IMG/VR virus record: IMGVR_UViG_3300044797_000098
Coordinates: 62,001-126,000 of that record
Length of the DNA: 64,000 nucleotides
Reading direction: 5' to 3' (one strand)
The translations under genes were made by a program, and so were the position numbers. Shown piece by piece: positions 7,568 to 56,914 of the stretch (its first letter is position 1; every line of letters begins with the position of its first letter). The notes under the pieces were generated by a model that did not search any database, was not told the origin of the DNA, and was given only the letters and a program-made list of their open reading frames with translations.

Positions 7568-7578
7568 ATATTTCTTTC

Positions 7579-10257: not shown

Positions 10258-10285
10258 TAATTTTGTATATTCAATAGGAACATAA

Positions 10286-14845: not shown

Positions 14846-14846
14846 C

Positions 14847-15683: not shown

Positions 15684-15684
15684 A

Positions 15685-17506: not shown

Positions 17507-17508
17507 TT

Positions 17509-18699: not shown

Positions 18700-18732
18700 A
18701 ATAATATGTGGCAATATCGATATTTTGCTATA

Positions 18733-19631: not shown

Positions 19632-19651
19632 CTTTACCTGTCTTTCTAATA

Positions 19652-20320: not shown

Positions 20321-20340
20321 ATCAATAATATACGAAAAAA

Positions 20341-20511
20341 TTAGCCTATTTGTATTAGTCGTTGGAATTGATCCATTGTCAATTCGACCGAATTGGCTAT
20401 TGTTTCTAATGGCTTATCTTTATTTTTTGCTACTATTGTTATTATGATTTTATTTGGTGATGGAGATTTAGAAACTTCAATATAAGAATGATCGGTGAAT
20501 TGGATTTTCAT
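20341..20511 (-). CDS. Small hypothetical protein (56 aa, not in the ORF track)
   Basis: MKIQFTDHSYIEVSKSPSPNKIIITIVAKNKDKPLETIANSVELTMDQFQRLIQIG* fills the gap directly after map. Confidence 0.6.
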   Translation of the reverse strand: MKIQFTDHSYIEVSKSPSPNKIIITIVAKNKDKPLETIANSVELTMDQFQRLIQIG

Positions 20512-20514
20512 AAT

Positions 20515-38329: not shown

Positions 38330-38626
38330 TCAGATTTCTTTTTTATATATTTTCTTGAACTTAAACTTAGCAGCCCTAGCTTCACGCTCTATCCTATGTT
38401 CTTCCGTTTCTACTATTGGTTCAGGTGGCACATAAGGCTTTGTTTTATCGGTTAATGCATAATATATTGATATCGGTATGGTTATAGGAAAGAATAAAAC
38501 ATACAATCCTACTCCAACAAGCACTAATCTACCAAATGAACTATATAAATCATGTCTATCATCTACCCATTCCCACATTTTATCTATCGGATTTTTCATT
38601 TTTTGCCAATTTGATTTGTTTTTCAA
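38330..38626 (-). CDS. Small membrane protein
   Basis: Hydrophobic stretch LVLVGVGLYVLFFPITIPISIYYAL. Confidence 0.55.
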   Translation of the reverse strand: MKNKSNWQKMKNPIDKMWEWVDDRHDLYSSFGRLVLVGVGLYVLFFPITIPISIYYALTDKTKPYVPPEPIVETEEHRIEREARAAKFKFKKIYKKEI

Positions 38627-40413: not shown

Positions 40414-41756
40414 TTATTACTTTCCTTTATCATTGGAATAATTTGTTCCATAACATATTTTTCTAACTTTGAACCAATATATTCTCTTCCATCGATCCAA
40501 ATTAATTTAATATTATTATCATCACATAATTGTTGTTTATAATTATCTCGTTCATGCTGATCTTTAAAATTAACTATTGCTCGTTCTAATGAAATACCAC
40601 CAAAACAAACTGGCTGGTAATGTTGCCTACCATTATATTCAATTATAGTATTTATTAATGGTAAATAAAAATCTGCTCTTAAATTTTTATCTACATTTGG
40701 AATAATTTCTTTTATTAGTTTTTCATGTTGAAACTTGATACCACTTAATTTGAGTAAATCAAATATCAATTTTGCATTTTTTCCGACCCCACACGCTGGG
40801 CACCCCTCTTCGCGATTTAATATGCCTTTTGGCTTTGCCTTCCAAATATAGCCACAATCATTTACTAAGCACTGAAAATCAATTGCCGTATGATTATTTA
40901 TATAATCTCCTAATCTTTTGACATTTCTATTTTTTAATCGTTCATCAACGTTTTGATTATTTAGTTTCAATGTGCCGGCGCATTGCGGACAACCATTGAT
41001 ATTATTAGGAATAATTTGCCAAACATATCCGCATCCGTCTATCAAACACTTAAATCTACATAAGGTCGCACCATTAATAATTTCATCCATTCTTTGGATA
41101 TTTTTACCAATTAGTCTTTCATCAACAATTTTATTGTTTAATGGAAGTTTTCCCCCACATCGCGGACAGCCTGTTTTGTTATTTAACACACCATTCGGTG
41201 ATGTCTTCCATATAAAATTGCAGCCCTGTATTAAACACTGAAAACCAATTTCAGTCATAGCATTTACACAATTATCTAGTCTTCTTATATTTCTTTCACC
41301 TAATCGTTGATCAATAATTTTATTTGTTAATGGAGCTAAGCCAGCACATTGAGGACATCCACTTTTAATATTTAAAATACTAGCGGGGGCTGCATTCCAA
41401 ATATATCCACAAGTATTTACTAAACATTCAAAATCTATTTCAGTATGATTATTTACATAATTTCCTATTCTTTTAATATTTCTATTTATTAATTTTTCAT
41501 CAATAACTTTATTATTTAATTTAGCATTACCTGAGCATTGTGGGCAGCCGTGCCCACCAAAAATATCGTCTGTCCTAGTTTTCCAAATATACATACAAGT
41601 TTCTACTAAACATTGAAAATTAATAGCAGTCCAACTATTTATATAGTTATCTAGCCTTTTGATTTTTCTATCGACTAATCTGGTATCGACAATATCATTA
41701 TTTAGCTTTTTCATTTTATTTTTAAATAACGTGTATTTATTACTTTCTTCGATCAA
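40410..41756 (-). CDS. Zinc-ribbon-repeat protein with C-terminal Vsr/DUF559-like endonuclease (homing-type)
   Basis: Five ~62-aa repeats L.N..VD.RL..RNIKR...Y.N....I.F.CL...C.YIW........GCP.C, then ADFYLP...IEYNGRQHY. Confidence 0.8.
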   Translation of the reverse strand: MIEESNKYTLFKNKMKKLNNDIVDTRLVDRKIKRLDNYINSWTAINFQCLVETCMYIWKTRTDDIFGGHGCPQCSGNAKLNNKVIDEKLINRNIKRIGNYVNNHTEIDFECLVNTCGYIWNAAPASILNIKSGCPQCAGLAPLTNKIIDQRLGERNIRRLDNCVNAMTEIGFQCLIQGCNFIWKTSPNGVLNNKTGCPRCGGKLPLNNKIVDERLIGKNIQRMDEIINGATLCRFKCLIDGCGYVWQIIPNNINGCPQCAGTLKLNNQNVDERLKNRNVKRLGDYINNHTAIDFQCLVNDCGYIWKAKPKGILNREEGCPACGVGKNAKLIFDLLKLSGIKFQHEKLIKEIIPNVDKNLRADFYLPLINTIIEYNGRQHYQPVCFGGISLERAIVNFKDQHERDNYKQQLCDDNNIKLIWIDGREYIGSKLEKYVMEQIIPMIKESNK

Positions 41757-43152
41757 CTACGTTTCCGCCAACGAACTTTCCAAATGTACTAGTTTTATTA
41801 GCAATTTTATCTTTGATTTTTTGTGCATCACTTATTGTTGTATTTTTCCCAGTATTTAGGGCTACGTTTAAATTACGTGCAGTTTCTTTTTCTTTAACAA
41901 CACTTGATAGATTTTTTATTTCTTCTGTTAGTTGTGTGGTGCGTTCTGCTGGAATACCGAGCCCCGAGAAAAATGAATAAATCTTAACAACATTTCGTGG
42001 TTCATCTATTTCATATATTCCTCGAAATATTTCAGGAGTTCCACACTGTTCTGTCAATAGCGCATTAGCATAATTGATTGCAACGGCTGGAATATCTTTC
42101 CAGCATGTCTTATTTGCTGCTACAATAAATCCAACATATTTACTCTCCTTGATATTAAATCCACTCGCAAGTAAATTATTATTCATATTTGAAATTATAG
42201 CTTCTGCAATCGAAGTCTCGGAACTATAATCTTCTATCTCCATTGAACCATATGTAGAATAACCTGATGAATCGATTAGAATTTTAAGCCATTCCATACT
42301 ATCTAAACTTTTAATCGATGATGGTGATGATGATAGGATATTGAACATATCCAGTGGTTCAACTATCGCTTTATTTGCAACCGAATAAAAATCCATTTGG
42401 CCCACATTAGAATAAATTGCCTCTATTCTTGCATTATCCACTAAAATAATATTAGCAACCTTTTTATTTTGTAAGTCTTTTGATAGAACCGCTAATGTTT
42501 CCATGGCATTAGATTTTGCCTTAAGATCCTCTGAATGCATTGGCAATATGCCAATAATTATAATTGGTTTTCCTAATTCATTTAATATATTTACTAATAC
42601 CTCACAACTACCAGCTCCGCTTCCACCGCCCAATGATGAGCATAACACAAATACTTGCGCATCGCCTAACTGCTTGCTAACCATTTCCTTGATAGCATCA
42701 GCATTAGCTTCCGCTGCATCTCTACCAATACTTAGTGTTCGTGCAGCGCCACCGATAGTATTGTACTCCAATAATAATTTATTACTTTCAGGAACATCTA
42801 TATACTTAAGATCATTCTGCGTCGTATTTAATACAACGCAATCATAGTTAAATTCACGAAACTGCTGGGCTAATTTACTTCCCGCTTGTCCTGATCCAAT
42901 TATTCCAAAATTAATTGATCGTTCCTTTTTTACTGGCTTTACACTCATTGTTTCCTCTTGTTTAACTATATCAATATCTTTCGTTTTTTCTGCTAATTTT
43001 GCTTTTAATTTTGCGAGTTTTTCTTGATCGATATCCATTGCTGGCTGTTCGTTTGTTATGTCATCCACAATGGTTTCTTCTACTAAGTTTAGTTTTGTAG
43101 TCTGAGCGCTCATTTTAGTTTTTCCCTTTTCATTTACGAATCCACTGCCCAT
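41740..43152 (-). CDS. Tubulin/FtsZ-family GTPase (PhuZ/TubZ-like)
   Basis: GSGQAG, NT...D, GGAA, signature GGGSGAG, LP...E, VDN, T7 loop LDSME. Confidence 0.88.
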   Translation of the reverse strand: MGSGFVNEKGKTKMSAQTTKLNLVEETIVDDITNEQPAMDIDQEKLAKLKAKLAEKTKDIDIVKQEETMSVKPVKKERSINFGIIGSGQAGSKLAQQFREFNYDCVVLNTTQNDLKYIDVPESNKLLLEYNTIGGAARTLSIGRDAAEANADAIKEMVSKQLGDAQVFVLCSSLGGGSGAGSCEVLVNILNELGKPIIIIGILPMHSEDLKAKSNAMETLAVLSKDLQNKKVANIILVDNARIEAIYSNVGQMDFYSVANKAIVEPLDMFNILSSSPSSIKSLDSMEWLKILIDSSGYSTYGSMEIEDYSSETSIAEAIISNMNNNLLASGFNIKESKYVGFIVAANKTCWKDIPAVAINYANALLTEQCGTPEIFRGIYEIDEPRNVVKIYSFFSGLGIPAERTTQLTEEIKNLSSVVKEKETARNLNVALNTGKNTTISDAQKIKDKIANKTSTFGKFVGGNVVDRRK

Positions 43153-43196: not shown

Positions 43197-45284
43197 TTAT
43201 TTTAGAAACCACGGATTTTTTTGATACCAATTAACCGTAGTGGCGATGCCATCTTTAAATTTTATCTTTGATTTCCAATTTAATTCATTTTTGATTTTAT
43301 CGCAATTTACCGAATAACGAAAGTCATGCCCATTGCCACGAGGATCTGTAATATGTTCCACAAGATTATGACCGCCACCCATGGCATTGCATACTTCTTG
43401 CACAACCTCTATATTGGAGTATTCTTGATTTGATGATATATTATATATTGTATTTACTTTATCAGATCCTAATATGGATAGCAACGCATCACAATTATCA
43501 TCAACAAATGTCCATTCACGAAGAAACGAGCCATTGCCATACACTGGTATCTTTTGATTATTCATAATTGATTTTATTATTACTGGAATAAGTTTCTCTG
43601 ATTGTCTCGGGCCATAATTATTTGACGCGCGAGTAATTACATATGGAAGTCCGAATGAGTTATTCGCTGCTTTGATTATTAACTCACCTGACGCTTTTGA
43701 GGCACTGTATGGATTTTTAGGATCTAATGGCGCCTCTTCTGTCCAAGGAAGGTCATTGGGTGATTTCAACGCGCCCATAACTTCGTCAGTATTTCCTGAA
43801 AAAGCAATCTTGCCATTTCTTTCTATTAAAAAGTTTTTATTATCAGCAACTGTTAAGCACCATATTTTTCCCTTATACTGTTGTCTTGTTGGTTTTGGAA
43901 GTAATATTAAACGTTGATTGGCAAATCCAACGTCATTGGCATCACCTGCAATTTTTCTTCCATTTATAAATGATTCGCAATGCCTTCTACCAACGTTAGG
44001 CTGGCATCCCAGCATCGCTCCCAAATAACATAATTGTGCTGTTAATTTTTCTGAAACCGTTGTTATTTGTGGAACACGTCCTTTAATACCAAATCCATGT
44101 CCATCGGAATCATGTATACCTCGCCATAATAATTTTAATAAATCTGTTCCGTGATTAAACATCCATTCTGGAATATGTTTATTTTTAGCGTACTTACCAA
44201 AGTTATCAAAAAACTCCATCCATTCTTTTGATCCAAAATATACGTGTTCGCCAGATTTTCCTTTTTGCAGACTATATTTTATATTAAGTGTAGTTAATGC
44301 TATCTCTAATGATTTTCTGGCTTTATCATTTTCTGGAACATCGAAAAATATTCTATATGAACGACTTAATGTCGTTTCTTGCGAACCACGTTTTTCTGGT
44401 TTTAAAAATCTACCAGTTTTTGGATCTCTACCTAATTTCAATCTTTCTTGATATGAAAGACCGCTTTTATTATGTGTTATCTTTTCTTGATATGCAGTAA
44501 ATCCATCTCCAATATATACTCCGCATAAATAAAATAATGCTCTTGCATCTACCATTCCTATGTTTGGAACATTTATTTGTTCTGCTGATATTTTATTTAT
44601 CTCACCTCTCGGTAAATAATTTTTTTCTTCGGAAATCTCTAATTCTTCCGCAGTATACCATTGTAATTTACAAATTTCATTTGTGGGGTGATCTGCACAT
44701 ATAAATCTATGATTAGGTGTAACAACTAAATCTGTCCTTTTACTATCAAAATGCATCATATCACCATCATAATCCTGAACTATTATTTTTTTAATTGGCT
44801 TCTCTTCCACACTACCGGTATCAGGATTAATTGTTAAAACTAATTCATTTTCTTTTAATTCTTGCCAGGTTTTAAATCCGTTTTTTGTTACTGCTCTTGT
44901 TTGCTCATCATAACAAGATGTATATACTAATTTCTTAACTCCCCATTTCACACAAGCATTCACAATAACTTGTGTCCCGAGAACATTAGAACGAATGAAC
45001 TCATTAGGATTTTTTAATGAGTCATCAACGAAGCTACAAGCAGCAGCGTGCAAAACAATTTCTGGTTTCACATACTCAAAAATCCTATTTATAATATGTT
45101 CATCGCATATATCTGCAAGATAGAATGAGTGGCTTTTGTGTTCGTAGATATTATTTAATAATGATGATTTAGATATTCTATCGATAGATACTATATCATA
45201 TGGAACTTTATCGTAAATTGCTTTACGAATAAAATTAGACATTATAAATCCACAGGAGCCTGTAATTAGTAATTTCTGTTTCAT
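43197..45284 (-). CDS. rmlB: dTDP-glucose 4,6-dehydratase containing an intein
   Basis: ITGSCGFI, H.AA.S.VD.S, S|TDEV split by the intein, PYSASKA, SNNYGP.Q.EKLIP, REW..V.D, GHD.RY. Exteins total 320 aa. Confidence 0.9.
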   Translation of the reverse strand: MKQKLLITGSCGFIMSNFIRKAIYDKVPYDIVSIDRISKSSLLNNIYEHKSHSFYLADICDEHIINRIFEYVKPEIVLHAAACSFVDDSLKNPNEFIRSNVLGTQVIVNACVKWGVKKLVYTSCYDEQTRAVTKNGFKTWQELKENELVLTINPDTGSVEEKPIKKIIVQDYDGDMMHFDSKRTDLVVTPNHRFICADHPTNEICKLQWYTAEELEISEEKNYLPRGEINKISAEQINVPNIGMVDARALFYLCGVYIGDGFTAYQEKITHNKSGLSYQERLKLGRDPKTGRFLKPEKRGSQETTLSRSYRIFFDVPENDKARKSLEIALTTLNIKYSLQKGKSGEHVYFGSKEWMEFFDNFGKYAKNKHIPEWMFNHGTDLLKLLWRGIHDSDGHGFGIKGRVPQITTVSEKLTAQLCYLGAMLGCQPNVGRRHCESFINGRKIAGDANDVGFANQRLILLPKPTRQQYKGKIWCLTVADNKNFLIERNGKIAFSGNTDEVMGALKSPNDLPWTEEAPLDPKNPYSASKASGELIIKAANNSFGLPYVITRASNNYGPRQSEKLIPVIIKSIMNNQKIPVYGNGSFLREWTFVDDNCDALLSILGSDKVNTIYNISSNQEYSNIEVVQEVCNAMGGGHNLVEHITDPRGNGHDFRYSVNCDKIKNELNWKSKIKFKDGIATTVNWYQKNPWFLK
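43791..44915 (-). mobile_element. 375-aa intein with LAGLIDADG homing endonuclease
   Basis: Starts CYDEQT, block B VTPNHRF, LAGLIDADG-like YLCGVYIGDG and LWRGIHDSDG, block F IWCLTV..NKNF, ends SGN followed by +1 Thr. Confidence 0.92.
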
Positions 45285-46120
45285 TTTTTACTCTTGTATA
45301 GATTATAGTTTGGATTACTTGTATATAATTGATGATCTTCCTTTATTACATTACCCCATTTTTTGCGGAATAGATTTACATTATGTTGCATAAATAGACG
45401 ATTTGTTTTTGTTGTTTTTAACGTTGCGGATTCTTCGTGAAAGATATTTGTTTCACCGCAATATACAACTTTTTTATTCATATTAAATTTGATAGATAGA
45501 TTCATATCAATATCGTCGAACGCCCAAATAAATTGCTCGTCAAATCCGTTTAATCCGCTCTTGTTCGTTTTACAAGTATTCTCAAATAATCCGGCACGAA
45601 TTAATAATACTGCTCCTGTGCAAGCGTTGAACTCACGATTCTTTCGTGCATTCGCATCTTCCATCTCACCTAACCTATAATGCCAAGGAAGCATGTCTTT
45701 ATTACGATCCCATTCTATCCCAGCGTGTTGCAATTTTCTTGTATCGGTATAATTTAGTTTTGCGCCAACAACACCGACATCATCATCGTTATCCATAATT
45801 TTCATCATATTTTTGATTGACGCAGTATCGTTGAAAACTATATCATTATTCAATAATAATATGTAATCACTTTCTTTTGGTGATGCTTCCTTGAATAAAA
45901 CATTACATCCTTGTGCGAAGTTTTGTAAATTATCCTTCCATTGTATTGGAACTATATTAGGATTATTCAATCCATTTAGATATTCTATCGAACCATCATT
46001 AGAACCATTTTCTTTTACTAACCATTTGTAATCAATGTTATTTAGTGATTTGATTAGTGTTGGAGCAAGTTTTTCTAATTTAGATTTACCGTTCCAAGTA
46101 AGCGTCAATATATATAACAT
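45281..46120 (-). CDS. Family 2 glycosyltransferase
   Basis: ENGSNDG, NFA.G.N, LLNND, VGAKL, TGA.LL, GFDE....DD.D, H.ES.T. Confidence 0.9.
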   Translation of the reverse strand: MLYILTLTWNGKSKLEKLAPTLIKSLNNIDYKWLVKENGSNDGSIEYLNGLNNPNIVPIQWKDNLQNFAQGCNVLFKEASPKESDYILLLNNDIVFNDTASIKNMMKIMDNDDDVGVVGAKLNYTDTRKLQHAGIEWDRNKDMLPWHYRLGEMEDANARKNREFNACTGAVLLIRAGLFENTCKTNKSGLNGFDEQFIWAFDDIDMNLSIKFNMNKKVVYCGETNIFHEESATLKTTKTNRLFMQHNVNLFRKKWGNVIKEDHQLYTSNPNYNLYKSKK

Positions 46121-47134
46121 TTAGAACCCTACGCTAATATTAGCCCCACCAAATATATGACCACCTGTATCCATTTGAAATGATGGGCCAATATATGTAT
46201 TATCCACGATGCCTTTTGGCAATAGACCACCGATATTAAATGATATTGGATTCAATATTCCTGCTACTTTTTTAGTTCCAGTTTCATAACCAACTCCTAA
46301 TTGCAGGATTGATATGGCTGGCGATACTTTTGTTGTACCATAACTCATTATACCTAATGTTAGACCGGCGTTAGCTGAACCACCAAATTTAGTAAAATCT
46401 ACGGCAGCTCCACCAGTACCAAAAAGACGAGGATTCCAAAATGAGAACGATGGCGCAGGATATGTTTCCTCGAACTTTCCAGTACTAACATTTATGGGAA
46501 CCGTTTTACCGTTTGATGTGATTTGCATTGTATTATACATAACGTGTTTGCCATCTGCCGTTGTTCCAAGCACACTATTCACCGAATATGTTCGTGGATA
46601 GATATCCTCGCTCCACGGAGTTTTACTTGATGCATCGAATGAAACATTACCTACGGGTACTGTTGTTCCTGTAAATTGTTCATTCAACTCCAAGTGCTGA
46701 ACATTGCTTGTATAACCATATGGATCGGCATTAGGGCAAGGGATTTGTTTTCCATTACAATCTACCGTTGGTACCGTTGATGGATGAGTATCAGGCGTTG
46801 TGCTTGTAGAACCAACGTTTGTTGCTACTGTACCGCCACTATTGACTGATACGTGATTGATACCAGTAATTTGAGCGCCAAGCGTGCTCAAATCTTTGCT
46901 AATTGTATTGAGATTTATGTCATTTTGTTTTGCAAAATTATTCAAATCGTCTTTTGACACATATGACGATTGAGATCGAACAATCTGATCTGCTAATTGT
47001 TTTTGTGTAATTACGGATTGATTTATTGCAGTTTGCATATTATGCATTTCTATCTGTTGGTAAATAATAAATCCAACTGCTCCAAATACAACTACGCCAG
47101 CAACTATTAAAATTATCTTTGTTATTAAATTCAT
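46121..47134 (-). CDS. Membrane-anchored protein with beta-strand C-terminus
   Basis: N-terminal TM helix, short coiled coil, amphipathic Gly-rich beta strands ending GANISVGF. Confidence 0.6.
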   Translation of the reverse strand: MNLITKIILIVAGVVVFGAVGFIIYQQIEMHNMQTAINQSVITQKQLADQIVRSQSSYVSKDDLNNFAKQNDINLNTISKDLSTLGAQITGINHVSVNSGGTVATNVGSTSTTPDTHPSTVPTVDCNGKQIPCPNADPYGYTSNVQHLELNEQFTGTTVPVGNVSFDASSKTPWSEDIYPRTYSVNSVLGTTADGKHVMYNTMQITSNGKTVPINVSTGKFEETYPAPSFSFWNPRLFGTGGAAVDFTKFGGSANAGLTLGIMSYGTTKVSPAISILQLGVGYETGTKKVAGILNPISFNIGGLLPKGIVDNTYIGPSFQMDTGGHIFGGANISVGF

Positions 47135-47172
47135 TTTACTTCCTTTGCACTCAATTTAGTGATGAAAACAAT

Positions 47173-47838
47173 TTACGCACCCCAGTCTTTAAGAAATACT
47201 TTTCTACCATCATTGTATAATTTATTTATATTTGCTGGGTTAGTGGATTTTTGTCTATAATGTATAACGGGCACTGATACCACCTTAAATGGTATCCCGA
47301 GTTTTCTTGCACGGAAACTTAAATCGCCATCATTGAAATAAAAATACTTTTCATTCCATATCTGTCCATCACCAAGATCTAATTTGTTCCAGTTTTCTTT
47401 TGATGATGCAACACACCAACCTGACATATATGAATTACCATCTAGATATGTATTTGCTTCACGAATAAAATTAAATTTATCATCTAACTGACCCATTGTT
47501 GGCCCAACGATAGCATCACAGTTTTCTATAATATCATTAGTCCAATTATCATAATTATCATTTACTTTAATATCATTGTTGAGAAATAATACATTATTTG
47601 CCCTTGATGCTCTATAACCTATATTGCATCCTTTGGAATGCAAATAATTTTCATTATTTCTAATATAGACAAATCTTGGATCTGTTATTTTTTCTAATTC
47701 TTTTTGTGTATCATCTGTTGATGCATTATCTACAATAATTATTTCATTATTATTGGATAGTTTAAATAGATCATTGACACAAGATTTTGTAAATGACCAT
47801 TTATTATACACTGGTATTATGATACTTAAATCATACAT
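47173..47838 (-). CDS. Family 2 glycosyltransferase
   Basis: SIIIPVYN, VDNASTD, FLNND, YF.D.DL..RA. Confidence 0.9.
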   Translation of the reverse strand: MYDLSIIIPVYNKWSFTKSCVNDLFKLSNNNEIIIVDNASTDDTQKELEKITDPRFVYIRNNENYLHSKGCNIGYRASRANNVLFLNNDIKVNDNYDNWTNDIIENCDAIVGPTMGQLDDKFNFIREANTYLDGNSYMSGWCVASSKENWNKLDLGDGQIWNEKYFYFNDGDLSFRARKLGIPFKVVSVPVIHYRQKSTNPANINKLYNDGRKVFLKDWGA

Positions 47839-48959
47839 TATACCGCCAAATCTAATATTCTTTTCGTTATTGTCATCCAGTTGTAATTTTTTTCAGTTTC
47901 CTCTATGTTGGCTTTATATTTTTTTAATAACTCATTCTTGTTGGAAACGGCATATTTTAATTTAACTACACCATCATCTAAATCTGGCTTGAATGCTTTT
48001 GTACCCTTGCTTTGCCAATACAAATAATTACCGGGAACCAAAAACTCTTTGCCATCAATTAATATAGAATTATCATCATTTAAAAAATCTAAAAATCCAC
48101 CGTATCTTGGTGCAATGTTAATTAACCCTAACGCGTTGGCTTCTAATGCACACATACCAAAACCTTCCGTATTACTTGCAGTAAATACGATATCACAAGA
48201 TTTATATAATGAATATATATTTGGTATATATTCTCTTATTATTTCTACTTCTGCGTGATTTTTATACTTAAACTCAAAATCACCAAATATATCTCTAAAT
48301 GATAGCTCAAATGGTTGAGTTGGATTTTTCTCTTTTACTTTTAATATTAAACACACATCGTCTGATTTATTAAATGCTTTTCCATAAATATCTAAAAGAC
48401 CACCTATATTTTTCCTTCGATGTATTTGACCTAATGGCTGAACGAGTATTTTATTTGTTTTCTTTGTTTTTAATTTGAACGGCATGGCTGATTTGATCTG
48501 ATCAAAATCAACACCATGTGGGATTACCGTCATAGCATTTTCTGGTATGCCAGAATCTAAAAAGATTTGTTTTGCAAAATTAGATGGTGGAAGCAATTTA
48601 TCTGCGAACTTGTAAGATTTTGCAAAACCATCTGGGATGGAGTTTTTACCAGCGAACTCATAACACCATATTCCAAATCTATTTTTATTAGAATGTGAAA
48701 GATATACTTGCATATTTTTTAATGCTGTATATGAAATTGACATATCATAATTATTATCTGGTAATTTACCAAATATTAACTTATTTTCTTCTGATGCACC
48801 TATTAAGTATTTTCTTAAATTTTCTGGTATATTTTTTTCACCATCGGTTGAGAATAAGTTAACATTATGACCTTGTGATATTAAGGCGGTTGCTATTCCA
48901 CGACCAACATGTGCCCAAGAATGATTAGCATTTAAAAATTGACGCATTATTATACGCAT
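47838..48959 (-). CDS. Family 4 glycosyltransferase (GT-B)
   Basis: PS.F, VIPHGVD, RKN, EGFGM..LEA. Confidence 0.9.
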   Translation of the reverse strand: MRIIMRQFLNANHSWAHVGRGIATALISQGHNVNLFSTDGEKNIPENLRKYLIGASEENKLIFGKLPDNNYDMSISYTALKNMQVYLSHSNKNRFGIWCYEFAGKNSIPDGFAKSYKFADKLLPPSNFAKQIFLDSGIPENAMTVIPHGVDFDQIKSAMPFKLKTKKTNKILVQPLGQIHRRKNIGGLLDIYGKAFNKSDDVCLILKVKEKNPTQPFELSFRDIFGDFEFKYKNHAEVEIIREYIPNIYSLYKSCDIVFTASNTEGFGMCALEANALGLINIAPRYGGFLDFLNDDNSILIDGKEFLVPGNYLYWQSKGTKAFKPDLDDGVVKLKYAVSNKNELLKKYKANIEETEKNYNWMTITKRILDLAV

Positions 48960-48988
48960 ACTTATGCTATATCACGTGATATATTTTT

Positions 48989-51900
48989 TTATTCGCCACC
49001 ACCATATATTTCAAATGTCGGCCCAGTATTTCCGCTTGGGTTATAAGTGTTATCACCGCTATATAATGTAGATGTGCTATATGTTTGTGTTCCATTTGTT
49101 GGTGATCCAACGAGATCATCATAAATGCCAGTTGATATTGGTGAATATCCGGGCGTTGGTCCATTTGGCATTGCAAAAACATTACTAATCAATACAGTGG
49201 CAGTTCCGCCACTCAATGTTAGCTGACCAGTATTAAAAGCGTGACCGGTTGTTTCACCAATAACATTTAGACTTACAGTGCCGGTTGGTAAAGCAAATGA
49301 ACCACTAACAGTAATAGTTATAGTAATATCACCTCCTGGTGGTGGATTATTATAATCTGATGGACTACCAGTAATTGTTATTGTAATTGTTGGTGTTGCA
49401 CATTGATAGAAGTAAGATGTAACAGTAGATGTAACAGCATTATACGAAGAACTACCACCATAGGAAGCTTGCACCGTATGATATCCTTGTTGTTCGGTTC
49501 CACCAAAATTAGTGCCACTGATTGCTATGCCAGGATAAGATGTATCAATACCACCTCTATGTATTAAATTACCGGTCAATGCCGTTGTAACACCGTCTAT
49601 TAATAATGTAACTGTTCCAGTAACATTATGAGATCCATCACCAATTAAGTCTACATAATCCGTAGTACTTGGATTTCCAGCGGTAGTGCTGTTGGTAAAG
49701 TTTTGAGATATGGAAGGTGTTAATTTAGAAACAACGAACCCGCCTATGAATTGACTTGAACCATTAAAATTGGAATCGCCGACATAGTTTGCTTGAAGTT
49801 GATAGGTGCCAGCAGTTGGAATATTTAAACTGCCAAGCGTTGCAACATTTGCGCTTATTACACCGGAACCTAAACTAGTAAATGGTGATACTATTGTAAA
49901 TGTTATGCTACCAGATGGACCTGGCGAAACCACATATTGTGGATTAACTGTTGCACTAAGACTAAATGTACTAAATACCGTTTCACCAGATGACGGTGAT
50001 GCTGTGAATGGATTAATTGTTGTACTGGCTTTATTTACAGTTTGTGTAACTGTATTTGATGTACTTGGCCCATTATTACCATCACCAGAATACACTACAG
50101 TGATCGAGTGTGAACCAGCTGTCAATAATGCGTAAGATGTAGTATTTGTTGGTAATGTAGTTGTGGCAAATGTAACACCGCCGTTTTTGAATGTTAATGT
50201 ACCAGTTGGACTAGATCCATTTACGGTTGCGGTAAATATAACGGCTTGACCATATGTTGATGTTGGTAAGTTAGACAACAATGTTGTTGTGGTTGGCGAA
50301 GCTGTAACAGTTTGTGTGAAATTTATAGATGTATTTCCATTAAAATTTGCATCACCAGAATATGTGCTAGTTATTGTATGTGCTCCAATTGTTAACCCTG
50401 AATATGCGAGTGATCCTGTTCCACTAATTAATGAAATCGCTCCATTAATATTTACTCCGCCATTTTTAAATTGAACTGTACCTGTTGGTGTCCCGGTTGT
50501 AACAGATGTTACAGTTGAACTAAATGTTGTTGATTGATTAATGGCAGTGGTTGGAATAGAAGAATTAATTGATACTGAAACATTTGCTTTACTAACAGTT
50601 TGATTTGGTGATAGTGATATAGATGCCGAATTGTAAATCATATCTCCGTTGTAATTTGCAGAAATTGTATGATAAGCTGGAGACAAGGTTGGTGTAGCTA
50701 ACAACGCTGATGTTGATGTTTGGGCAGAACCAGCCACGAGTGTAATCGGAGCACCAAAATTAGTACCATCAATTACGAATTGTACGGTACCAGTTGGTGT
50801 TCCCTGTGTACCGACTGCTGTACCGAAAAATATTACACTATTACCGTAAATAGACGGATTAGCACTTGATGATATTGTAAATGTTGGAGTTAATCTATTA
50901 ATAACTTGGAATACTGTATTTGATGTATCTGGCGCATATGTTGAATCACCGCTATACACTGCTGTTATTGGATGGGTGCCTGGAAGTAGTTGTGTTGGAG
51001 ACAGTGAAAATGTTGCTATTCCACCAACTAATCCCTGAACAGAACCAAGGTTTACTCCGTTGTCTTGGAATTGCACGGTACCCGTTGGAGTACCCAATGA
51101 ACCACTTACGGTGGCAGTAAATATTACGCCAGATGTTCCGTAATTTACTGTTGGCATATTCGATATTAAAAATGTAGATGAAGCTTCTGCTGTTATTGTT
51201 TCTACAACAGTGTTTGATGTTGGACTTGGGTTATTATTAGGATCACCACCATAGATAGCAGTTATATTATATACACCTGTTGTTAAACTACTAGTGGAAT
51301 ATGTTGCTACACCAGATCCATTCACGGTGGCAGGACTTCCCATAGGACTTCCGCCATTATAGAATTGAACAGTACCGGTTATTGGTCCATTGTTAACTCC
51401 TACAACAGTAGCAGTAAATGTTATACTTACACTTGCTGGTGATGTAGGAGCAGATGACATCAATGTTGTAGTCGTATTTTGTTTATTTATCACCTCACTT
51501 ATAGCATTAGATGTGCTGATTAAATAATTAGTATCACCAGAATATTTAGCGGTAAGAGAATGCGGTGATAGAGGTACGCTAAATAATGGAACATTTAATG
51601 TGGCCAATCCAGAACCATTTATAGTAACCGCACTACCAATAGCAGTTACACCATCATAGAACGTAACAGTTCCAGTTGGAATAGTAAAGGCAGATGAAAC
51701 AGTTGCTGACAATAATACAGCCGTTCCCCACGTTACAGGATTCGCTGATGTAATCAATGTTGTCATACTTGGTAATTGATTTACCACTTGCACTAATATA
51801 GGTGATGTAGATAAACTAAAATTACTATCACCAGAATATTGTGCAGTTATATTATGATTACCAGCAGTTAATGTAGAAACCATTAATGATCCCGAATTGA

Positions 51901-52615
51901 CAGAAACACCAGATGTACCAATAACCGTTGCGCCATCATAAAATGTAATTGTACCAGTTGCAACACCGCCAGCTGGTACTGTTATAGCAGCTGAAAAAGT
52001 TATGCTTCCACCATAGTTAGATGGATTAGCGTTTGAAAATACTGCTATTGATGAGGAAAACTCGCTGACTGTAATTAATGCAGGAAACGAAAAGCCACCG
52101 CCAAATATATTATCTCCGCTATATTCTGCTATAACCGCATGTGTTCCACCACTTAATACCACTGGCACCGACATCGCTGAACCGCCAACAAGAGTTTCTG
52201 TATCTATTACATTTACACCGTCGAGAAATGTGACCATTCCTGTTGGAGTACCGCCAGTTCCAGTAACAGTTGAAGAAAATGTTATAAGTGTACCATATGC
52301 TATGCTTGTGGCGGAAGGCATGATTGTAGTTGTTGATTGTGCTAGATTTACAATATCTACTTCCAATACATTTGAGAAACCGGGAGCAAAGTTTTGATCA
52401 CCAGCATAATAAGCTGTCATTTCATGTACGCCGAGCCCTAAAACGATAGATGAAATATTAAATGTAAATTGACCATTATTACCTAATCTACCAACCGAAA
52501 TAGTATGATTTTTATCTTGTAAAATAACTGTTCCAGTTGGAGTTAATAATATCCCGGAGGATAGTACTAAAACATTTATTATTACAGGATCACCTAATGC
52601 TATTATGAGTGCCAT
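48989..52615 (-). CDS. Ig-like (Big_3-type) repeat virion protein
   Basis: About 12 tandem ~95-aa repeats TT.L.S..P..G..VTF.A.V....PTG.V.F..G.......G.H.ITA.YSGD.N. Confidence 0.88.
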   Translation of the reverse strand: MALIIALGDPVIINVLVLSSGILLTPTGTVILQDKNHTISVGRLGNNGQFTFNISSIVLGLGVHEMTAYYAGDQNFAPGFSNVLEVDIVNLAQSTTTIMPSATSIAYGTLITFSSTVTGTGGTPTGMVTFLDGVNVIDTETLVGGSAMSVPVVLSGGTHAVIAEYSGDNIFGGGFSFPALITVSEFSSSIAVFSNANPSNYGGSITFSAAITVPAGGVATGTITFYDGATVIGTSGVSVNSGSLMVSTLTAGNHNITAQYSGDSNFSLSTSPILVQVVNQLPSMTTLITSANPVTWGTAVLLSATVSSAFTIPTGTVTFYDGVTAIGSAVTINGSGLATLNVPLFSVPLSPHSLTAKYSGDTNYLISTSNAISEVINKQNTTTTLMSSAPTSPASVSITFTATVVGVNNGPITGTVQFYNGGSPMGSPATVNGSGVATYSTSSLTTGVYNITAIYGGDPNNNPSPTSNTVVETITAEASSTFLISNMPTVNYGTSGVIFTATVSGSLGTPTGTVQFQDNGVNLGSVQGLVGGIATFSLSPTQLLPGTHPITAVYSGDSTYAPDTSNTVFQVINRLTPTFTISSSANPSIYGNSVIFFGTAVGTQGTPTGTVQFVIDGTNFGAPITLVAGSAQTSTSALLATPTLSPAYHTISANYNGDMIYNSASISLSPNQTVSKANVSVSINSSIPTTAINQSTTFSSTVTSVTTGTPTGTVQFKNGGVNINGAISLISGTGSLAYSGLTIGAHTITSTYSGDANFNGNTSINFTQTVTASPTTTTLLSNLPTSTYGQAVIFTATVNGSSPTGTLTFKNGGVTFATTTLPTNTTSYALLTAGSHSITVVYSGDGNNGPSTSNTVTQTVNKASTTINPFTASPSSGETVFSTFSLSATVNPQYVVSPGPSGSITFTIVSPFTSLGSGVISANVATLGSLNIPTAGTYQLQANYVGDSNFNGSSQFIGGFVVSKLTPSISQNFTNSTTAGNPSTTDYVDLIGDGSHNVTGTVTLLIDGVTTALTGNLIHRGGIDTSYPGIAISGTNFGGTEQQGYHTVQASYGGSSSYNAVTSTVTSYFYQCATPTITITITGSPSDYNNPPPGGDITITITVSGSFALPTGTVSLNVIGETTGHAFNTGQLTLSGGTATVLISNVFAMPNGPTPGYSPISTGIYDDLVGSPTNGTQTYSTSTLYSGDNTYNPSGNTGPTFEIYGGGE

Positions 52616-52621: not shown

Positions 52622-55600
52622 CTAACTAATAATAACGATTGATGGATCTGGGCATACAGTATTTGTTGGAGGTGGATTTGGAACACCGAATATATTTTGT
52701 GTTTTTGTTGAATTGACGTAGATTGGTGTATTATTCCAACCAGCTTTCTTAAGATATACTGTAACTTCTATTTTTGTATTTAATGTTTGTTTTACTGGAT
52801 CTTGATACAAATTAGTAAAATTTAATGTCAATAGCCCGGTTGAATAATTTATTGATACTCCTATTTTACCATCAACAATAATCCCTGTAATACATTGTGG
52901 ATCAATACCATCTAATTGTGGTGAAAATGATTGAACTGCTGTTCCAAATCTAATCTGATTTAGATTTAGCGCATTTAAAGTCACGTTTGTACAGTCAGCG
53001 AACTTCATGGCTCTATAACCAAGATTTGTGTATCCAGTGCCAGTAACATCAGCAATAAAATCAGTTAACAAATTAACACTGTGTTCAGTATCAAATGATA
53101 CTTCTGGTATCTCAAATAAAATTGTTGACATTTCATAATCCATTTTCATAAAGTAACCATCTGGTCGTAAAAATTGTCCTCCATTATTTACTATAAGATT
53201 ATTTGATATGAAAAAATCATTTCTGCCTGGATCAAATGGTTGAGCTCTTGGAAATGTTTGTGATATTACACCTGGAACATAACATAAGGGATTAGTATAA
53301 CCTGTTTGATAGTTGAAAGATGCTTGAACCAATCTTGGATTGGAATTAACCACTACACTTGATTGATCCCATACTAATTGACTCATTATACTGAATGATA
53401 GTGGATTATATTGAAGATTTTGATTAGCAAATAAAGTATATCCATCTAAATATACATCTGGTAACGGATGTAATGTATCACCCCTATTTGTGCCATTTGA
53501 TGGGTAATCATCATTTCTGTCTATATATTTTTCCAATGTGAGACGAATAGCATTAAATGATGTTCCTATTTTATTTGCAGGAGATGTTGTGGCTGGTATT
53601 GGAGCAACGGCATTTACATAGTTTGATATATAATTTATATCAGTTGCATTTAAGATCATATCACCATTTATATCTGATCTCATAATTTCTAATATAGTAT
53701 CTGATGTGTAATATTGTTTTTGTATTGTTATATCATTATTACTTATTAAATTTACAATAGAAAATGAACCATTATTTCCTGGACTGGTTACTGAATTAAA
53801 AATTGCAAATGTATCACCGCCTAAGTTTGATATGCTATTAAAATTAGCTGATGCGCTTCCAAAATTGGCTTGCGCCCCATTAGATGGATTTGGGACTAAA
53901 ATACCATCACTGCCAGATGCTATTATATTTAATGATGGATCCAGCACTTGCCACTGTAAATAACCATCAGCAACAAATAATTCTGTTTGTTGAATATATT
54001 GACTATAACTTGGTATGATATTTAAATTTACTGTTGCGAGTTGTTGTGCTAAGGCTAAATCATTATCATCTACAATGCCATCACCATTAACATCACCATA
54101 AATCATTGAAATATATTCTGCTTTTGATATTTTGTAATAAAATGATGGATTAGCTGTGTTTGGAATTATTTTTGCACCATTCAATGAGCCATTCACCAAT
54201 AATGATACTAACTCTATTATATTTTGATCATATCGATATCCATCAGTAGGGTCGGTTATTACTTTTATTACAATTTGATTCCCAACCATCCCATATTCGT
54301 GAAAGGCTGCTGTTAATGTTGAATTGAATGCGTTATATGTTTTTACATTTTGATCTGATATCGTACCAATAATTAACGGCTCCGAGACATTTTGTATATT
54401 AGCTAATGATGTGGCATTCAATAATGTAATTGATGGCTCAAATTGTTGTTGTGTAAAGACAGGTTCACCGGTTCGCTCACTCTGAACAGGAACACTATCT
54501 ACTGTTATTGCTTGTAATAATGCATAATATAAATCATTTCTAACAAACTGAATATCATTAAGAACATAATCTTGTGTCAGTCCTGTTGTTGGGTTTATCT
54601 GTGTCTTGGGAACGAAGACACCGTTACCAGCATCGTATGCCTGACCATCTGAAACTTTTGCTGAATCTGTCCATACTTGAAACCATAATGATTGCTCTGG
54701 TACATCTACCCATACGCTACCATTGAATAATGTTTCCCAAGTGTTTGATGCCTTGTTTGTACCGACTGCCAATTGTATTTGACATGTATCTGCTGATCCT
54801 GCTCGTTTTACCGTAACAGCGTAATAGGTTCCTGATTGGATCACTAATCCGGAACCAACGGGCGTGTTACTAAATATGAAATCAACGGGTTGCGGAACTG
54901 TATTTAATTGAATACCGGATGCTAAAAGAGTCGAATAATTGACACTCAACTGTGCTAACGGTATATTAGATGGATCAAAATCTATTGGTGCTTGTGGTGT
55001 AATATCTGTTGGGCATGATACAGTAGATTGAAGTGGATATAAGCTAATTAATAAATCACCTGTCCATACTAGATTGCTCGGTGTAGTTTCATTTATTACT
55101 GAAAATAAAAGAGTTATTTTTTGTATATTATTTGTTGATGCTAAAAACTTTTGTGCTACCTGTGAGCTTACATCATTTTCAATGATGCTGGCATATGAAA
55201 GAGGGGCGGTGCTTATATCTAAATTATCTATATTGTAACTTGGTAATGCTGCTGCCAATGTGCCGGCTAACGTAGAACCAGTACTAACGAAAAAATCTCT
55301 AAAAAACAAATTGGGTTCAACATCTTGTGAGATCATTATACAATCTCTTGATAGAGTTAAAGGATTTGCTTCCTTAATTGTTATTACTCCACCAAGGTTT
55401 AACGATTGATTGGCTGCTCCTATGAAATCATTGAATAATAAGGTTAATATAGATCTATAATGTTTTGAACTTAATTGTTTTTCATTTCTATCAAATGTAA
55501 ATCTATCATATTGTAAATTATTTTGAAAATCTAATCCAATAATCAATACTTTAACCGTTCTATTACCAGAAGCTTTTGAACCACATAACTCAATTTGTAA

Positions 55601-55855: not shown

Positions 55856-55870
55856 TATATATTCCTATAT

Positions 55871-56902: not shown

Positions 56903-56914
56903 TTTCCTTACTCT

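What the first reader, a model, noticed from the sequence alone, without database searches (positions are those of the whole stretch)
43197..48959. Glycan-synthesis cassette (GT4, GT2, GT2, RmlB) embedded in the structural/lysis gene run
Seen: four glycan enzymes and a membrane protein sit directly downstream of the baseplate/Ig genes and upstream of tubulin and endolysin, on the same strand with minimal gaps. Established: RmlB makes the 4-keto-6-deoxy intermediate for rhamnose-type sugars. Inference: late co-expression fits capsid/tail glycosylation better than DNA glucosylation, and these are the obvious candidate writers for the DGY motif. Host-surface conversion is the alternative.
Basis: partly seen in the sequence, partly recalled or inferred. 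Interest (0 to 1): 0.72.

Follow-up and report, generated by a model that had tools for sequence, protein, structure and literature searches.

The report
Jumbo-phage glycan island beside tail-fibre genes
An uncultured 406-kb peat phage carries, right after its baseplate and fibre genes, a conserved but variable set of sugar-adding enzymes (one interrupted by an intein) that most likely coats its own virion proteins with rhamnose-containing glycans, though the target is not yet shown.

Summary
Window 43197-48959 (- strand) has five tightly packed genes: GT4 (373 aa), GT2 (221 aa), a 337-aa membrane-anchored protein, GT2 (279 aa) and an RmlB-like NDP-glucose 4,6-dehydratase. They follow a gp6-like baseplate wedge gene and 2286-aa, 1077-aa and Ig-repeat proteins, and precede TubZ, an HNH gene and a GH25 endolysin.

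The module is a core feature of a large clade of uncultured jumbo phages. GT4 (5') and RmlB (3') bracket a variable interior: 5.8 kb here, about 16.6 kb in a relative, with GT6, GT11, pyruvyl- and methyltransferases.

Elsewhere the genome encodes a plant/Mimivirus-type 3,5-epimerase/4-reductase, which gives a two-enzyme NDP-L-rhamnose route. It has no RmlA, RmlC, ThyA-family base hydroxymethylase or polytopic flippase, polymerase or ligase.

The DGY tripeptide is enriched in virion-module proteins (74 found, 7.8 expected).

Best reading (about 0.45): soluble enzymes glycosylate fibre or baseplate proteins in the cytoplasm. Host-envelope conversion is a serious rival. Expression timing and acceptor are unproven.

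The parts
48967..48974 (-). TGATATAG box, 7 nt upstream of the GT4 ATG; candidate promoter (-10-like) heading the island
   Evidence: The motif is about 5-fold enriched within 25 nt of start codons genome-wide (19 genes). Upstream of GT4 it is exact in 6 of 13 related loci and a TGTTATA/CGTTATA variant in 4 more, although the surrounding spacer is not conserved.
47838..48959 (-). GT4-family (GT-B, retaining-type EX7E) glycosyltransferase, 373 aa; conserved 5' anchor of the island
   Evidence: It is present directly after the fibre genes in all 13 related loci. There are 490 homologue clusters, and the listed best 120 (47% identity or more) are unnamed or generically named metagenome proteins, many on contigs of 200-478 kb. 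No TM segment.
47173..47838 (-). GT2 (GT-A) glycosyltransferase, 221 aa, soluble
   Evidence: PF00535 70.8 bits. No TM segment, so it is not GtrB-like in architecture. Absent from L004.
46121..47134 (-). 337-aa envelope protein: N-terminal TM helix and coil, S/T/P-rich linker, beta domain, C-terminal small beta-barrel ending in Phe
   Evidence: AF2 pLDDT 82.6. Residues 232-337 match 8-stranded barrels, Z 9.6 to 5.6. Full-length AFDB match is named OMP beta-barrel protein, 5.7e-14. 148 homologues. It lies 123 kb from the island in relative G002.
45281..46120 (-). GT2 (GT-A) glycosyltransferase, 279 aa, soluble; candidate rhamnosyltransferase
   Evidence: PF00535 35.5 bits. AF2 pLDDT 92.4. Best PDB fold is Listeria RmlT (TDP-rhamnose enzyme), 8.8e-11, then TarP, AvpGT, SpsA and TarS.
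44916..45284 (-). N-extein (residues 1-123) of the RmlB-like NDP-glucose 4,6-dehydratase
   Evidence: The Rossmann motif is GSCGFIM. The extein ends ...VYTS, just before the catalytic Thr.
43791..44915 (-). Intein, 375 aa (residues 124-498): Cys1, TPNH block B, two LAGLIDADG motifs, C-terminal ...SGN followed by Thr+1
   Evidence: (PF14890, 24.3 bits, below cut-off). Orthologues at about 82% identity lack it (L002, L003). The same-site junction ...F[S/C]GN|TDEV was seen in 9 of 10 homologues inspected, out of 182 intein-length homologues. A second peat sample holds both junctions.
43197..43790 (-). C-extein (residues 499-695) of the dehydratase, with the TDE and YSASK catalytic motifs
   Evidence: dN/dS is 0.06 against L002.
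48989..52615 (-). 1208-aa protein with ten Big_3_5 Ig-like domains; candidate surface decoration or fibre (only in the closest relatives)
   Evidence: PF16640, 485 bits, 10 stretches.
52622..55855 (-). 1077-aa fibre/baseplate-associated protein; always immediately upstream of the island; DGY-rich
56915..63775 (-). 2286-aa Laminin_G_3 protein following the gp6-like baseplate wedge gene; carries a tandem DGY array
41740..43152 (-). TubZ-like tubulin; conserved 3' boundary of the island

Best explanation
This is a self-contained, cytoplasmic glycan-writing island that decorates the phage's own virion proteins, most plausibly the baseplate-distal fibre proteins encoded just upstream.

Proposed mechanism:
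1. The host supplies dTDP- or UDP-glucose.
2. After its intein splices out, the RmlB-like enzyme makes the NDP-4-keto-6-deoxyglucose.
3. An NRS/ER-type 3,5-epimerase/4-reductase, encoded 160 kb away, converts it to NDP-L-rhamnose.
4. The three soluble transferases (GT4, then the two GT2s) build a short glycan directly on folded or assembling virion proteins before lysis.

The interior of the island varies between relatives, so the glycan would differ from phage to phage.

Shown: the gene identities, the conserved position, the sugar-nucleotide enzymes and the lack of export machinery.
Inferred: the acceptor, the order of the transferases, the timing and the product sugar.
For: 1. Position. The island begins directly after the gp6-like wedge, 2286-aa, 1077-aa and Ig-repeat genes, on the same strand and without terminators. 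This holds in 13 loci, down to about 40% identity.
2. Conserved box. A TGATATAG-type box sits just upstream of GT4 across the clade, and also precedes two tail-module genes.
3. Soluble enzymes. All four enzymes lack TM segments. No protein of the 406-kb genome has more than 4 hydrophobic segments, so the phage encodes no Wzx, Wzy, ligase, GtrC or oligosaccharyltransferase.
4. Variable interior. Relatives fill the same slot with GT6, GT11, pyruvyl- and methyltransferases, or with an aminotransferase, acetyltransferase and dehydratase set. This is the pattern of an exposed, diversifying glycan.
5. Rhamnose route. The two-enzyme route parallels Mimivirus: PDB 7jid (UDP-L-rhamnose synthase) 5e-22, 4qqr 2.5e-37, and the putative dehydratase 6vlo 6.6e-43. 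RmlA and RmlC are absent.
6. DGY. The tripeptide is found 74 times against 7.8 expected in the virion block, and 16 against 10.2 elsewhere. DGF, NGY and DAY are not enriched. In 13 loci the upstream fibre proteins hold 125 (8.1 expected) and the downstream proteins 2. The positions turn over between homologues. T4 virion proteins show only 5 against 2.0.
7. Native genes. Composition matches the genome and the genes are under purifying selection, so this is not a recent moron.
8. Precedent. Mycobacteriophage capsid and tail-tube glycosylation, as summarised in PMC12619734.
Against: - No glycoprotein, transcript timing or acceptor has been observed.
- The only RNA evidence is a 267-nt contig from a relative.
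- The best fold matches of the 279-aa GT2 are enzymes that glycosylate wall teichoic acid (RmlT, TarP, TarS). However, all GT-A hits score similarly.
- Variable glycan islands are equally typical of host-surface conversion.
- The epimerase/reductase gene is not in the island, and was found in only 1 of 5 relatives' records, which are incomplete.
- The dehydratase scores below the NCBIfam equivalog cut-off.
- DGY may be a structural or ligand-binding motif; some copies lie in dockerin-like Ca-loop contexts.
Confidence: 0.45

Rival explanations
1. Host-envelope conversion. The soluble transferases add rhamnose-containing side groups to host lipid-linked or polymer acceptors (LPS core or O-antigen, capsule, teichoic acid or S-layer glycan) at the inner face of the membrane. 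The host's own exporters display them. This would block superinfection or stop progeny sticking to infected cells and debris.
For: - The best fold matches of the 279-aa GT2 are RmlT, prophage-encoded TarP and TarS, all cell-wall polymer glycosyltransferases.
- PHROG labels the GTs as 'moron/host takeover', and the 221-aa GT2 weakly matches 'GtrB-like O-antigen conversion'.
- An envelope protein (337 aa, IM anchor plus OMP-like barrel) is embedded in the cassette.
- Variable content is typical of surface-antigen loci.
Against: - No GtrA/GtrC-type, Wzx/Wzy or ligase-like polytopic protein is encoded anywhere in the genome.
- The 221-aa GT2 lacks GtrB's TM segments.
- By my own knowledge, experimentally known surface-converting phage glycosyltransferases are from temperate phages. 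This is a 406-kb phage whose island is a vertically inherited core feature tied to fibre genes.
- The 337-aa protein lies elsewhere in a relative.
Confidence: 0.27
2. DNA hypermodification. The transferases glycosylate modified bases in phage DNA to evade restriction.
For: - Phage GTs that put diverse glycans on DNA are known (Pyle et al. 2024, cited in PMC12619734).
- The island lies a few genes from UvsW helicase and DNA methylases.
- One fold match, AvpGT, is a nucleoside glycosyltransferase.
Against: - No ThyA-family hydroxymethylase; ThyX is present, which fits ordinary thymine.
- No Pfam match to T4-type DNA glucosyltransferases among the cassette proteins.
- The island is anchored to tail genes, not nucleotide-metabolism genes.
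- Pyruvyl-, methyl-, GT6 and GT11 enzymes in relatives point to complex oligosaccharides.
Confidence: 0.05
3. Mixed neighbours without one common target. The genes are co-located by phage synteny only. RmlB and the epimerase/reductase would boost a host rhamnose pool. The GTs would act on some other phage or host protein or small molecule. The 337-aa protein would be an independent envelope or lysis factor, for example a Lom-like or membrane-spanning protein near the endolysin.
For: - The 337-aa gene is unlinked from the island in G002.
- L004 keeps GT4, the 337-aa gene and RmlB but no GT2.
- A second GT locus and the epimerase/reductase lie 160-170 kb away.
- No spanin-like genes are evident next to the endolysin.
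Against: - GT4 and RmlB bracket the slot in every relative checked.
- Tight packing behind a single conserved promoter-like box.
- The interiors in relatives are all glycan enzymes.
Confidence: 0.15

Closest known systems
Mycobacteriophage virion glycosylation (Freeman et al. 2023, as summarised in PMC12619734)
   Same: Phage-encoded soluble glycosyltransferases and a proposed cytoplasmic decoration of virion proteins.
   Different: There the glycans sit on the C-termini of capsid and tail-tube subunits of siphoviruses of Actinobacteria. Here the phage is a 406-kb myovirus-like phage, the island follows the baseplate and fibre genes, it has its own sugar-nucleotide enzymes and a variable interior, and no glycoprotein has been shown. 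Only about 25% identity to actinophage GTs.
Mimivirus R141 / L780 UDP-L-rhamnose pathway and fibril glycosylation; chlorovirus capsid glycosylation (own knowledge; PDB 6vlo, 7jid, 3oy2)
   Same: A virus-encoded 4,6-dehydratase plus a bifunctional 3,5-epimerase/4-reductase, without RmlA or RmlC, and virus-encoded GTs. Sequence matches: 7jid 5e-22, 6vlo 6.6e-43, B736L 5e-4.
   Different: Those are eukaryotic giant viruses. Here the dehydratase is closer to bacterial RmlB (8e-74), carries an intein, and the two pathway genes are 160 kb apart.
Prophage TarP, and Listeria RmlT / S. aureus TarS wall-teichoic-acid glycosyltransferases
   Same: Soluble GT-A enzymes. RmlT uses TDP-rhamnose. They are the best fold matches of the 279-aa GT2.
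   Different: Only 13-17% identity. They carry extra oligomerisation or acceptor domains that are absent here. They act on Gram-positive cell-wall polymers, whereas the embedded 337-aa protein hints at a diderm host.
Gtr (GtrA/GtrB/GtrC) O-antigen conversion cassettes of temperate phages
   Same: Phage-borne GT2 enzymes; a weak PHROG hit to GtrB-like.
   Different: No flippase, no serotype-specific polytopic GtrC, no TM segments in the GT2, and no linkage to an integrase or attachment site.
Same-site inteins in RmlB-type dehydratases of uncultured bacteria, archaea and phages
   Same: Identical insertion point (S|TDEV), a conserved ...GN|T junction and a LAGLIDADG domain. 182 intein-length homologues at 37-60% identity, among them ones from Omnitrophota, Nitrososphaeraceae and a CPR bacterium.
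   Different: This is a new host gene copy only. A relative (L001) instead carries an intein between Y and S of the YSASK motif.
Lambda Lom-type outer-membrane barrel encoded after the tail-fibre genes (own knowledge)
   Same: A small beta-barrel envelope protein encoded at the distal end of a tail gene cluster.
   Different: The 337-aa protein has an N-terminal membrane anchor, a coil and an extra beta domain. There is no sequence similarity, and OM insertion is only inferred.

Membership tests
dTDP-glucose 4,6-dehydratase (RmlB, TIGR01181) | Whole-protein HMM score at or above the equivalog cut-off (365.1 bits) | tested here: not met
   302 bits with the intein and 328.5 bits for the intein-free orthologue. 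Five relatives score 298-357 bits. It is far the best family, but below cut-off.
dTDP-glucose 4,6-dehydratase (RmlB, TIGR01181) | Extended-SDR catalytic motifs: Thr-Asp-Glu and Tyr-x-x-x-Lys, plus an N-terminal Rossmann Gly motif | tested here: met
   TDEVMG follows the intein directly and YSASK lies downstream. The N-terminal motif is GSCGFIM, with the third Gly replaced.
dTDP-glucose 4,6-dehydratase (RmlB, TIGR01181) | Catalytic conversion of dTDP- (or UDP-) glucose to the 4-keto-6-deoxy sugar | not testable with these tools
   Needs an enzyme assay. The nucleotide preference is unknown.
Class 1 intein with LAGLIDADG homing endonuclease | Cys/Ser1, block B TxxH, C-terminal Asn, and Cys/Ser/Thr at +1 | tested here: met
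   C124, TPNH, N498 and T499.
Class 1 intein with LAGLIDADG homing endonuclease | Penultimate His | tested here: not met
   It is Gly (…SGN). The same GN ending was seen in all 9 same-site homologues whose junction was read, so it is a lineage trait. Pfam Intein_splicing scores 24.3 bits, below the cut-off of 35.8.
Class 1 intein with LAGLIDADG homing endonuclease | Insertion in a conserved active-site motif, with intein-free alleles in close relatives | tested here: met
   It is inserted at S|TDEV. L002 and L003 are intein-free, and L001 has an intein at Y|SASK instead.
Class 1 intein with LAGLIDADG homing endonuclease | Protein splicing activity | not testable with these tools
   Purifying selection on the C-extein (dN/dS 0.06) argues that the host gene is still used.
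GT4 glycosyltransferases (Pfam Glycos_transf_1 / Glyco_transf_4) | Pfam scores over the gathering cut-offs, and the EX7E motif | tested here: met
   41.8 against 26.4 bits and 30.0 against 28.5 bits. The motif reads EGFGMCALE.
GT2 glycosyltransferases (Pfam Glycos_transf_2) | Pfam score over the cut-off; GT-A fold with an acidic metal-binding motif | tested here: met
   70.8 and 35.5 bits against 23.3. NND takes the DxD position in both. The AF2 GT-A model has pLDDT 92.
NRS/ER-type NDP-4-keto-6-deoxyglucose 3,5-epimerase/4-reductase (partner gene, G000 265,329-266,204) | Closer to bifunctional plant/Mimivirus enzymes than to bacterial RmlD; YxxxK motif present | tested here: met
   4qqr 2.5e-37, 7jid 5e-22 and RmlD 3sc6 1.9e-6. 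TIGR01214 scores 41 bits against a cut-off of 224. The motif reads YSQTK.
Phage virion-glycosylation systems | Glycan covalently attached to virion proteins | not testable with these tools
   There is no isolate. Only context and motif statistics are available.
Phage virion-glycosylation systems | GT genes co-located and co-oriented with structural genes | tested here: met
Gtr-type O-antigen conversion | GtrA flippase, membrane-anchored GtrB and polytopic GtrC | tested here: not met
   The GT2 has no TM segments, and no protein in the genome has more than 4 hydrophobic segments. Small GtrA-like proteins were not searched by HMM.
DNA base glycosylation systems | A ThyA-family pyrimidine hydroxymethylase supplying the acceptor base | tested here: not met
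   PF00303 is absent from a record that is 95% complete, and ThyX is present. Other acceptor chemistries were not tested.

The most novel reading that the evidence does not exclude
A whole clade of uncultured jumbo phages writes its own, strain-variable, rhamnose-containing glycan coat onto tail-fibre and other virion proteins. The attachment would be through the tyrosine of a minimal Asp-Gly-Tyr sequon. That sequon is kept at 10-15 times the chance density and turns over in position like the glycan-shield sites of animal viruses. The machinery would be a fibre-linked island bracketed by a GT4 and an (often intein-bearing) RmlB, fed by a giant-virus-type two-enzyme rhamnose pathway.
Probability: 0.13. 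Interest if true: 0.85.

Novelty: new variant of a known kind. Interest (0 to 1): 0.6.

Why it matters
Virion glycosylation in phages has so far been demonstrated only for a few actinobacteriophages. In giant eukaryotic viruses, self-encoded glycan machinery is a hallmark of autonomy. A conserved but internally variable glycan island, wired to the fibre genes of a large environmental jumbo-phage clade, would extend that idea to huge phages.

It also gives a concrete, testable candidate sequon (DGY). And it shows a plant/Mimivirus-type rhamnose synthase in a phage, which finds only three weak matches (22-24% identity) among 50,697 deposited phage records. Glycan coats bear on host range, on trapping by debris or mucus-like matrices, and on immune recognition of phages.

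The two alternative intein sites in one sugar-pathway gene make a neat natural system for studying intein homing in phage populations.

Tried and rejected
- DNA search of the region against 50,697 phage records found no match. tblastn of the 1077-aa protein and of TubZ also found none, so there is no cultured relative.
- PHROG scans of 20 upstream virion-block proteins named only the gp6-like wedge and the sheath. The temporal class of the TGATATAG box could therefore not be inferred from gene functions.
- The sigma-70 promoter and terminator scan was at chance level.
- Transcript timing: no RNA run holds this phage. One metatranscriptome gave only a 267-nt, roughly 89%-identical contig in the 337-aa gene, which may even be DNA carry-over.
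- Foldseek of the 337-aa model against PDB gave nothing significant. Only VIA and AFDB clusters gave the barrel reading.
- PDB sequence searches of the three GTs gave generic GT hits with no information on the acceptor.
- Complex prediction of the three GTs with a DGY-bearing fragment of the 2286-aa protein gave no answer, neither for nor against.
- DGY as a simple inherited structural position is rejected: the positions are mostly not conserved between homologues.
- DGY as a generic beta-turn plus aromatic is rejected: DGF and DGW are not enriched.
- The 337-aa protein as an obligate part of the glycan machinery is rejected: it is unlinked in G002.

Full report
**What is there**

The window belongs to a single 406,470-bp IMG/VR viral record. 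CheckV estimates it at 95% complete. It has about 33% G+C and comes from a peat metagenome.

Between 43197 and 48959 the - strand carries five ORFs that abut or overlap, with gaps of -4 to 38 bp:
- A GT4-family transferase of 373 aa. It scores over the cut-off for Pfam Glycos_transf_1 and Glyco_transf_4 and has an EX7E motif.
- A GT2 of 221 aa.
- A 337-aa protein with one N-terminal hydrophobic helix.
- A GT2 of 279 aa.
- A 695-aa extended SDR whose best family is dTDP-glucose 4,6-dehydratase.

None of the four enzymes has a transmembrane segment.

Upstream on the same strand lie:
- a 1208-aa protein made of ten Big_3_5 Ig-like domains;
- a 1077-aa protein;
- an HNH endonuclease;
- a 2286-aa Laminin_G_3 protein;
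- just past the window edge, a 1363-aa gp6-like baseplate wedge protein (phrog_6, 1e-40), with the tail sheath further up.

Downstream lie a TubZ-like tubulin, a second HNH gene, a GH25+PG_binding_1 endolysin, small ORFs, a UvsW helicase and a DNA methylase.

The "RmlB" ORF is twice the normal length because residues 124-498 (window 43791-44915) are an intein. Its features are:
- Cys1;
- a TPNH block B;
- two LAGLIDADG motifs;
- a C-terminal ...SGN, followed by Thr499, which is the catalytic Thr of the TDEV motif.

Two orthologues at about 82% identity (L002, L003) lack the intein. A third (L001) instead has an intein between the Y and S of the catalytic YSASK motif.

The search found 182 dehydratase homologues of intein-bearing length, 37-60% identical to this one. 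They come from Omnitrophota, Nitrososphaeraceae, a CPR bacterium and large viral contigs. I inspected ten of them. Nine show the same ...F[S/C]GN|TDEV junction, so the unusual penultimate Gly is a lineage trait. The intein is thus a new member of an existing, though little-described, allele family.

A second peat sample holds identical contigs across both junctions. The C-extein is under strong purifying selection (dN/dS 0.06).

**The module is a clade feature with a variable interior**

Thirteen distinct related loci from IMG/VR and other assemblies keep the same order: 2286-aa, 1077-aa, GT4..., RmlB, TubZ. This holds down to about 40% amino-acid identity.

The GT4 family has 490 homologue clusters and the 337-aa family has 148. 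The sources give them no name or only a generic one, and many lie on contigs of 200-478 kb.

GT4 is always the first gene after the fibre genes. RmlB was found in all five relatives' records that I searched, and it directly precedes TubZ wherever I looked.

Between these two anchors the content changes:
- L004 has only GT4, the 337-aa gene and RmlB.
- L007 adds a Glyco_trans_1_2 enzyme, a PglD-like acetyltransferase, a DegT aminotransferase and another 4,6-dehydratase.
- In G002 the slot is about 16.6 kb. It holds three further GT2 domains, a GT2-GT6 fusion, a GT11, a polysaccharide pyruvyl transferase, a methyltransferase and extra SDRs.

All five window genes evolve under purifying selection (dN/dS 0.06-0.18) and match the genome's composition.

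**The sugar pathway**

The genome has no RmlA (PF00483) and no RmlC (PF00908). It does encode a 291-aa SDR at G000 265,329-266,204. This is not a bacterial RmlD:
- It matches the Arabidopsis 3,5-epimerase/4-reductase (4qqr, 2.5e-37).
- It matches the Mimivirus UDP-L-rhamnose synthase (7jid, 5e-22).
- It matches RmlD only at 1.9e-6, and scores 41 bits against a cut-off of 224 for TIGR01214.

Together with the dehydratase this gives a two-enzyme route from host NDP-glucose to NDP-L-rhamnose. Established knowledge holds that plants and Mimivirus use this route. A 45%-identical homologue exists in G002. Among 50,697 deposited phage records there are only three weak matches.

The 279-aa GT2 folds confidently (pLDDT 92). 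Its best solved neighbour is the TDP-rhamnose-dependent RmlT, although other GT-A enzymes score almost as well.

A second small glycan locus, with a GT2 and a methyltransferase-GT fusion, lies at 277.8-280.5 kb.

**Which acceptor?**

Against DNA:
- There is no ThyA-family hydroxymethylase, and ThyX is present.
- The island is anchored to tail genes.
- The enzymes in relatives point to complex oligosaccharides.

Against an autonomous lipid-linked export pathway:
- No protein in the genome has more than four hydrophobic 19-mers. So there is no Wzx, Wzy, ligase, GtrC or oligosaccharyltransferase.

That leaves direct cytoplasmic transfer, either to phage proteins or to host intermediates that the host then exports. 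I favour virion proteins (0.45) for these reasons:
- the conserved linkage to the fibre genes;
- the native, core character of the island;
- the variable interior;
- the parallel with giant viruses;
- the DGY statistics below.

Host-envelope conversion stays at about 0.27. The nearest folds are teichoic-acid glycosyltransferases, which include prophage TarP. Variable glycan loci also fit that role.

**The DGY motif**

- Genome-wide, DGY occurs 90 times against 18.5 expected. The five permutations of the same residues occur 13-35 times.
- 74 of the 90 lie in the virion block at 55-205 kb (7.8 expected). The rest of the genome has 16 (10.2 expected).
- DGF, DGW, NGY, EGY, DAY and DSY are not enriched, so all three residues matter.
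- In 13 related loci, the fibre proteins upstream of GT4 hold 125 DGY (8.1 expected). The proteins downstream hold 2 (6.3 expected).
- Positions are mostly not conserved between homologues, copy numbers differ, and tandem DGYxDGY arrays expand and contract.
- T4 virion proteins show only 5 against 2.0 expected.

This is the behaviour of a short linear motif selected for its presence, which fits a modification or ligand-binding site. But nothing ties it to these transferases, and some copies sit in dockerin-like Ca-loop contexts. The loci are also not phylogenetically independent, and the genome-wide counts rest on a simple ORF caller.

**Expression**

A sigma-70 promoter and terminator scan was at chance level.

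An 8-mer search of upstream regions found TGATATA[G/T]. It is about 5-fold enriched within 25 nt of start codons, at 19 genes. One copy lies 7 nt upstream of the GT4 ATG. At that place, 6 of 13 related loci have the exact box and 4 have a TGTTATA/CGTTATA variant, in spacers that are otherwise unconserved.

The same box precedes two tail-module genes (714 and 1641 aa). It also precedes genes just upstream of the epimerase/reductase and of the second GT locus. This suggests that the island has its own conserved promoter of a phage-wide class, but the timing of that class is unknown.

No RNA data for this phage exist in the runs served.

**The 337-aa protein**

The AF2 model (pLDDT 82.6) shows these parts in order:
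- an N-terminal membrane helix that continues as a coil;
- an S/T/P-rich linker;
- a beta domain;
- a C-terminal small barrel that ends in Phe.

The barrel aligns with 8-stranded barrels (Z 9.6 to a designed barrel; 5.6-6.0 to OmpA, OmpW and PagL). The full length matches an AFDB cluster named OMP beta-barrel protein (5.7e-14).

In G002 its homologue lies 123 kb from the island. I therefore treat it as an independent envelope factor. It may span or decorate a diderm envelope, and it could have a role in lysis or exclusion. I do not treat it as glycan machinery.

**Verdict**

The finding is a new variant of known kinds, namely phage and giant-virus self-glycosylation and RmlB inteins. Several features are, to my knowledge, undescribed:
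- a GT4...RmlB-bracketed variable island tied to jumbo-phage fibre genes;
- an NRS/ER-type rhamnose synthase in a phage;
- alternative intein sites in one gene;
- a virion-specific DGY motif.

Noticed in passing
G000 265,329-266,204 (- strand; outside the window, locus L021:7330-8205): A plant/Mimivirus-type bifunctional 3,5-epimerase/4-reductase (4qqr 2.5e-37; 7jid 5e-22). It completes a two-enzyme NDP-L-rhamnose route with the intein-bearing dehydratase. It finds only three weak matches among deposited phage records.
   Followed up: yes
window 1-17184 (+ strand block), 52622-63775, and G000 126-205 kb: The DGY tripeptide is 9.5-fold enriched in virion-module proteins (74 against 7.8 expected). 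The enrichment is specific for Asp, Gly and Tyr. Positions turn over between homologues, and there are tandem DGYxDGY arrays. In T4 virion proteins it is much weaker (5 against 2.0).
   Followed up: partly
window 48967-48974 and 18 other genes of G000: A TGATATA[G/T] box lies 1-22 nt upstream of start codons and is conserved upstream of GT4 in relatives. It is a candidate phage promoter that would give leaderless or short-leader mRNAs. Its temporal class is unknown.
   Followed up: partly
L001:13710-15794: A relative's dehydratase carries a different intein, inserted between Y and S of the catalytic YSASK motif (C1 ... VHN|S). So two alternative intein sites occur in one gene within an approximately 82%-identical phage group.
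   Followed up: partly
window 55871-56902 and 40410-41756: Two HNH/treble-clef endonuclease genes lie between conserved genes (2286-aa|1077-aa and TubZ|endolysin). Both are absent at these places in all relatives, so they are free-standing homing endonucleases.
   Followed up: partly
L006 about 17014-19659 and L015 about 18615-21017: The UvsW helicase homologues of two relatives are interrupted by roughly 1 kb. This may be another intein or endonuclease insertion.
   Followed up: no
window 46121-47134: The 337-aa protein combines an inner-membrane anchor with an OMP-like C-terminal barrel that ends in Phe. This suggests a diderm host and a possible membrane-bridging, exclusion or lysis role. 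No spanin-like genes are evident next to the endolysin.
   Followed up: partly
G000 277,830-280,484 (loci L022:5830-8484): A second glycan locus holds a 633-aa methyltransferase + Glyco_trans_1_2 fusion and a 244-aa GT2.
   Followed up: partly
window 48989-52615: A 1208-aa protein of ten tandem Big_3_5 Ig-like domains, present only in the closest relatives. Other relatives have three small ORFs in its place.
   Followed up: no
window 38330-38626: A 98-aa ORF with one strongly hydrophobic stretch lies about 0.7 kb downstream of the endolysin gene. It is a holin candidate.
   Followed up: no
window 36637-63775 compared with T4 (L042): The gene order gp6-like wedge, large wedge and fibre proteins, ..., UvsW echoes the T4 order gp6-gp12 ... 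uvsW. This hints at distant T4-like ancestry of the tail module.
   Followed up: no
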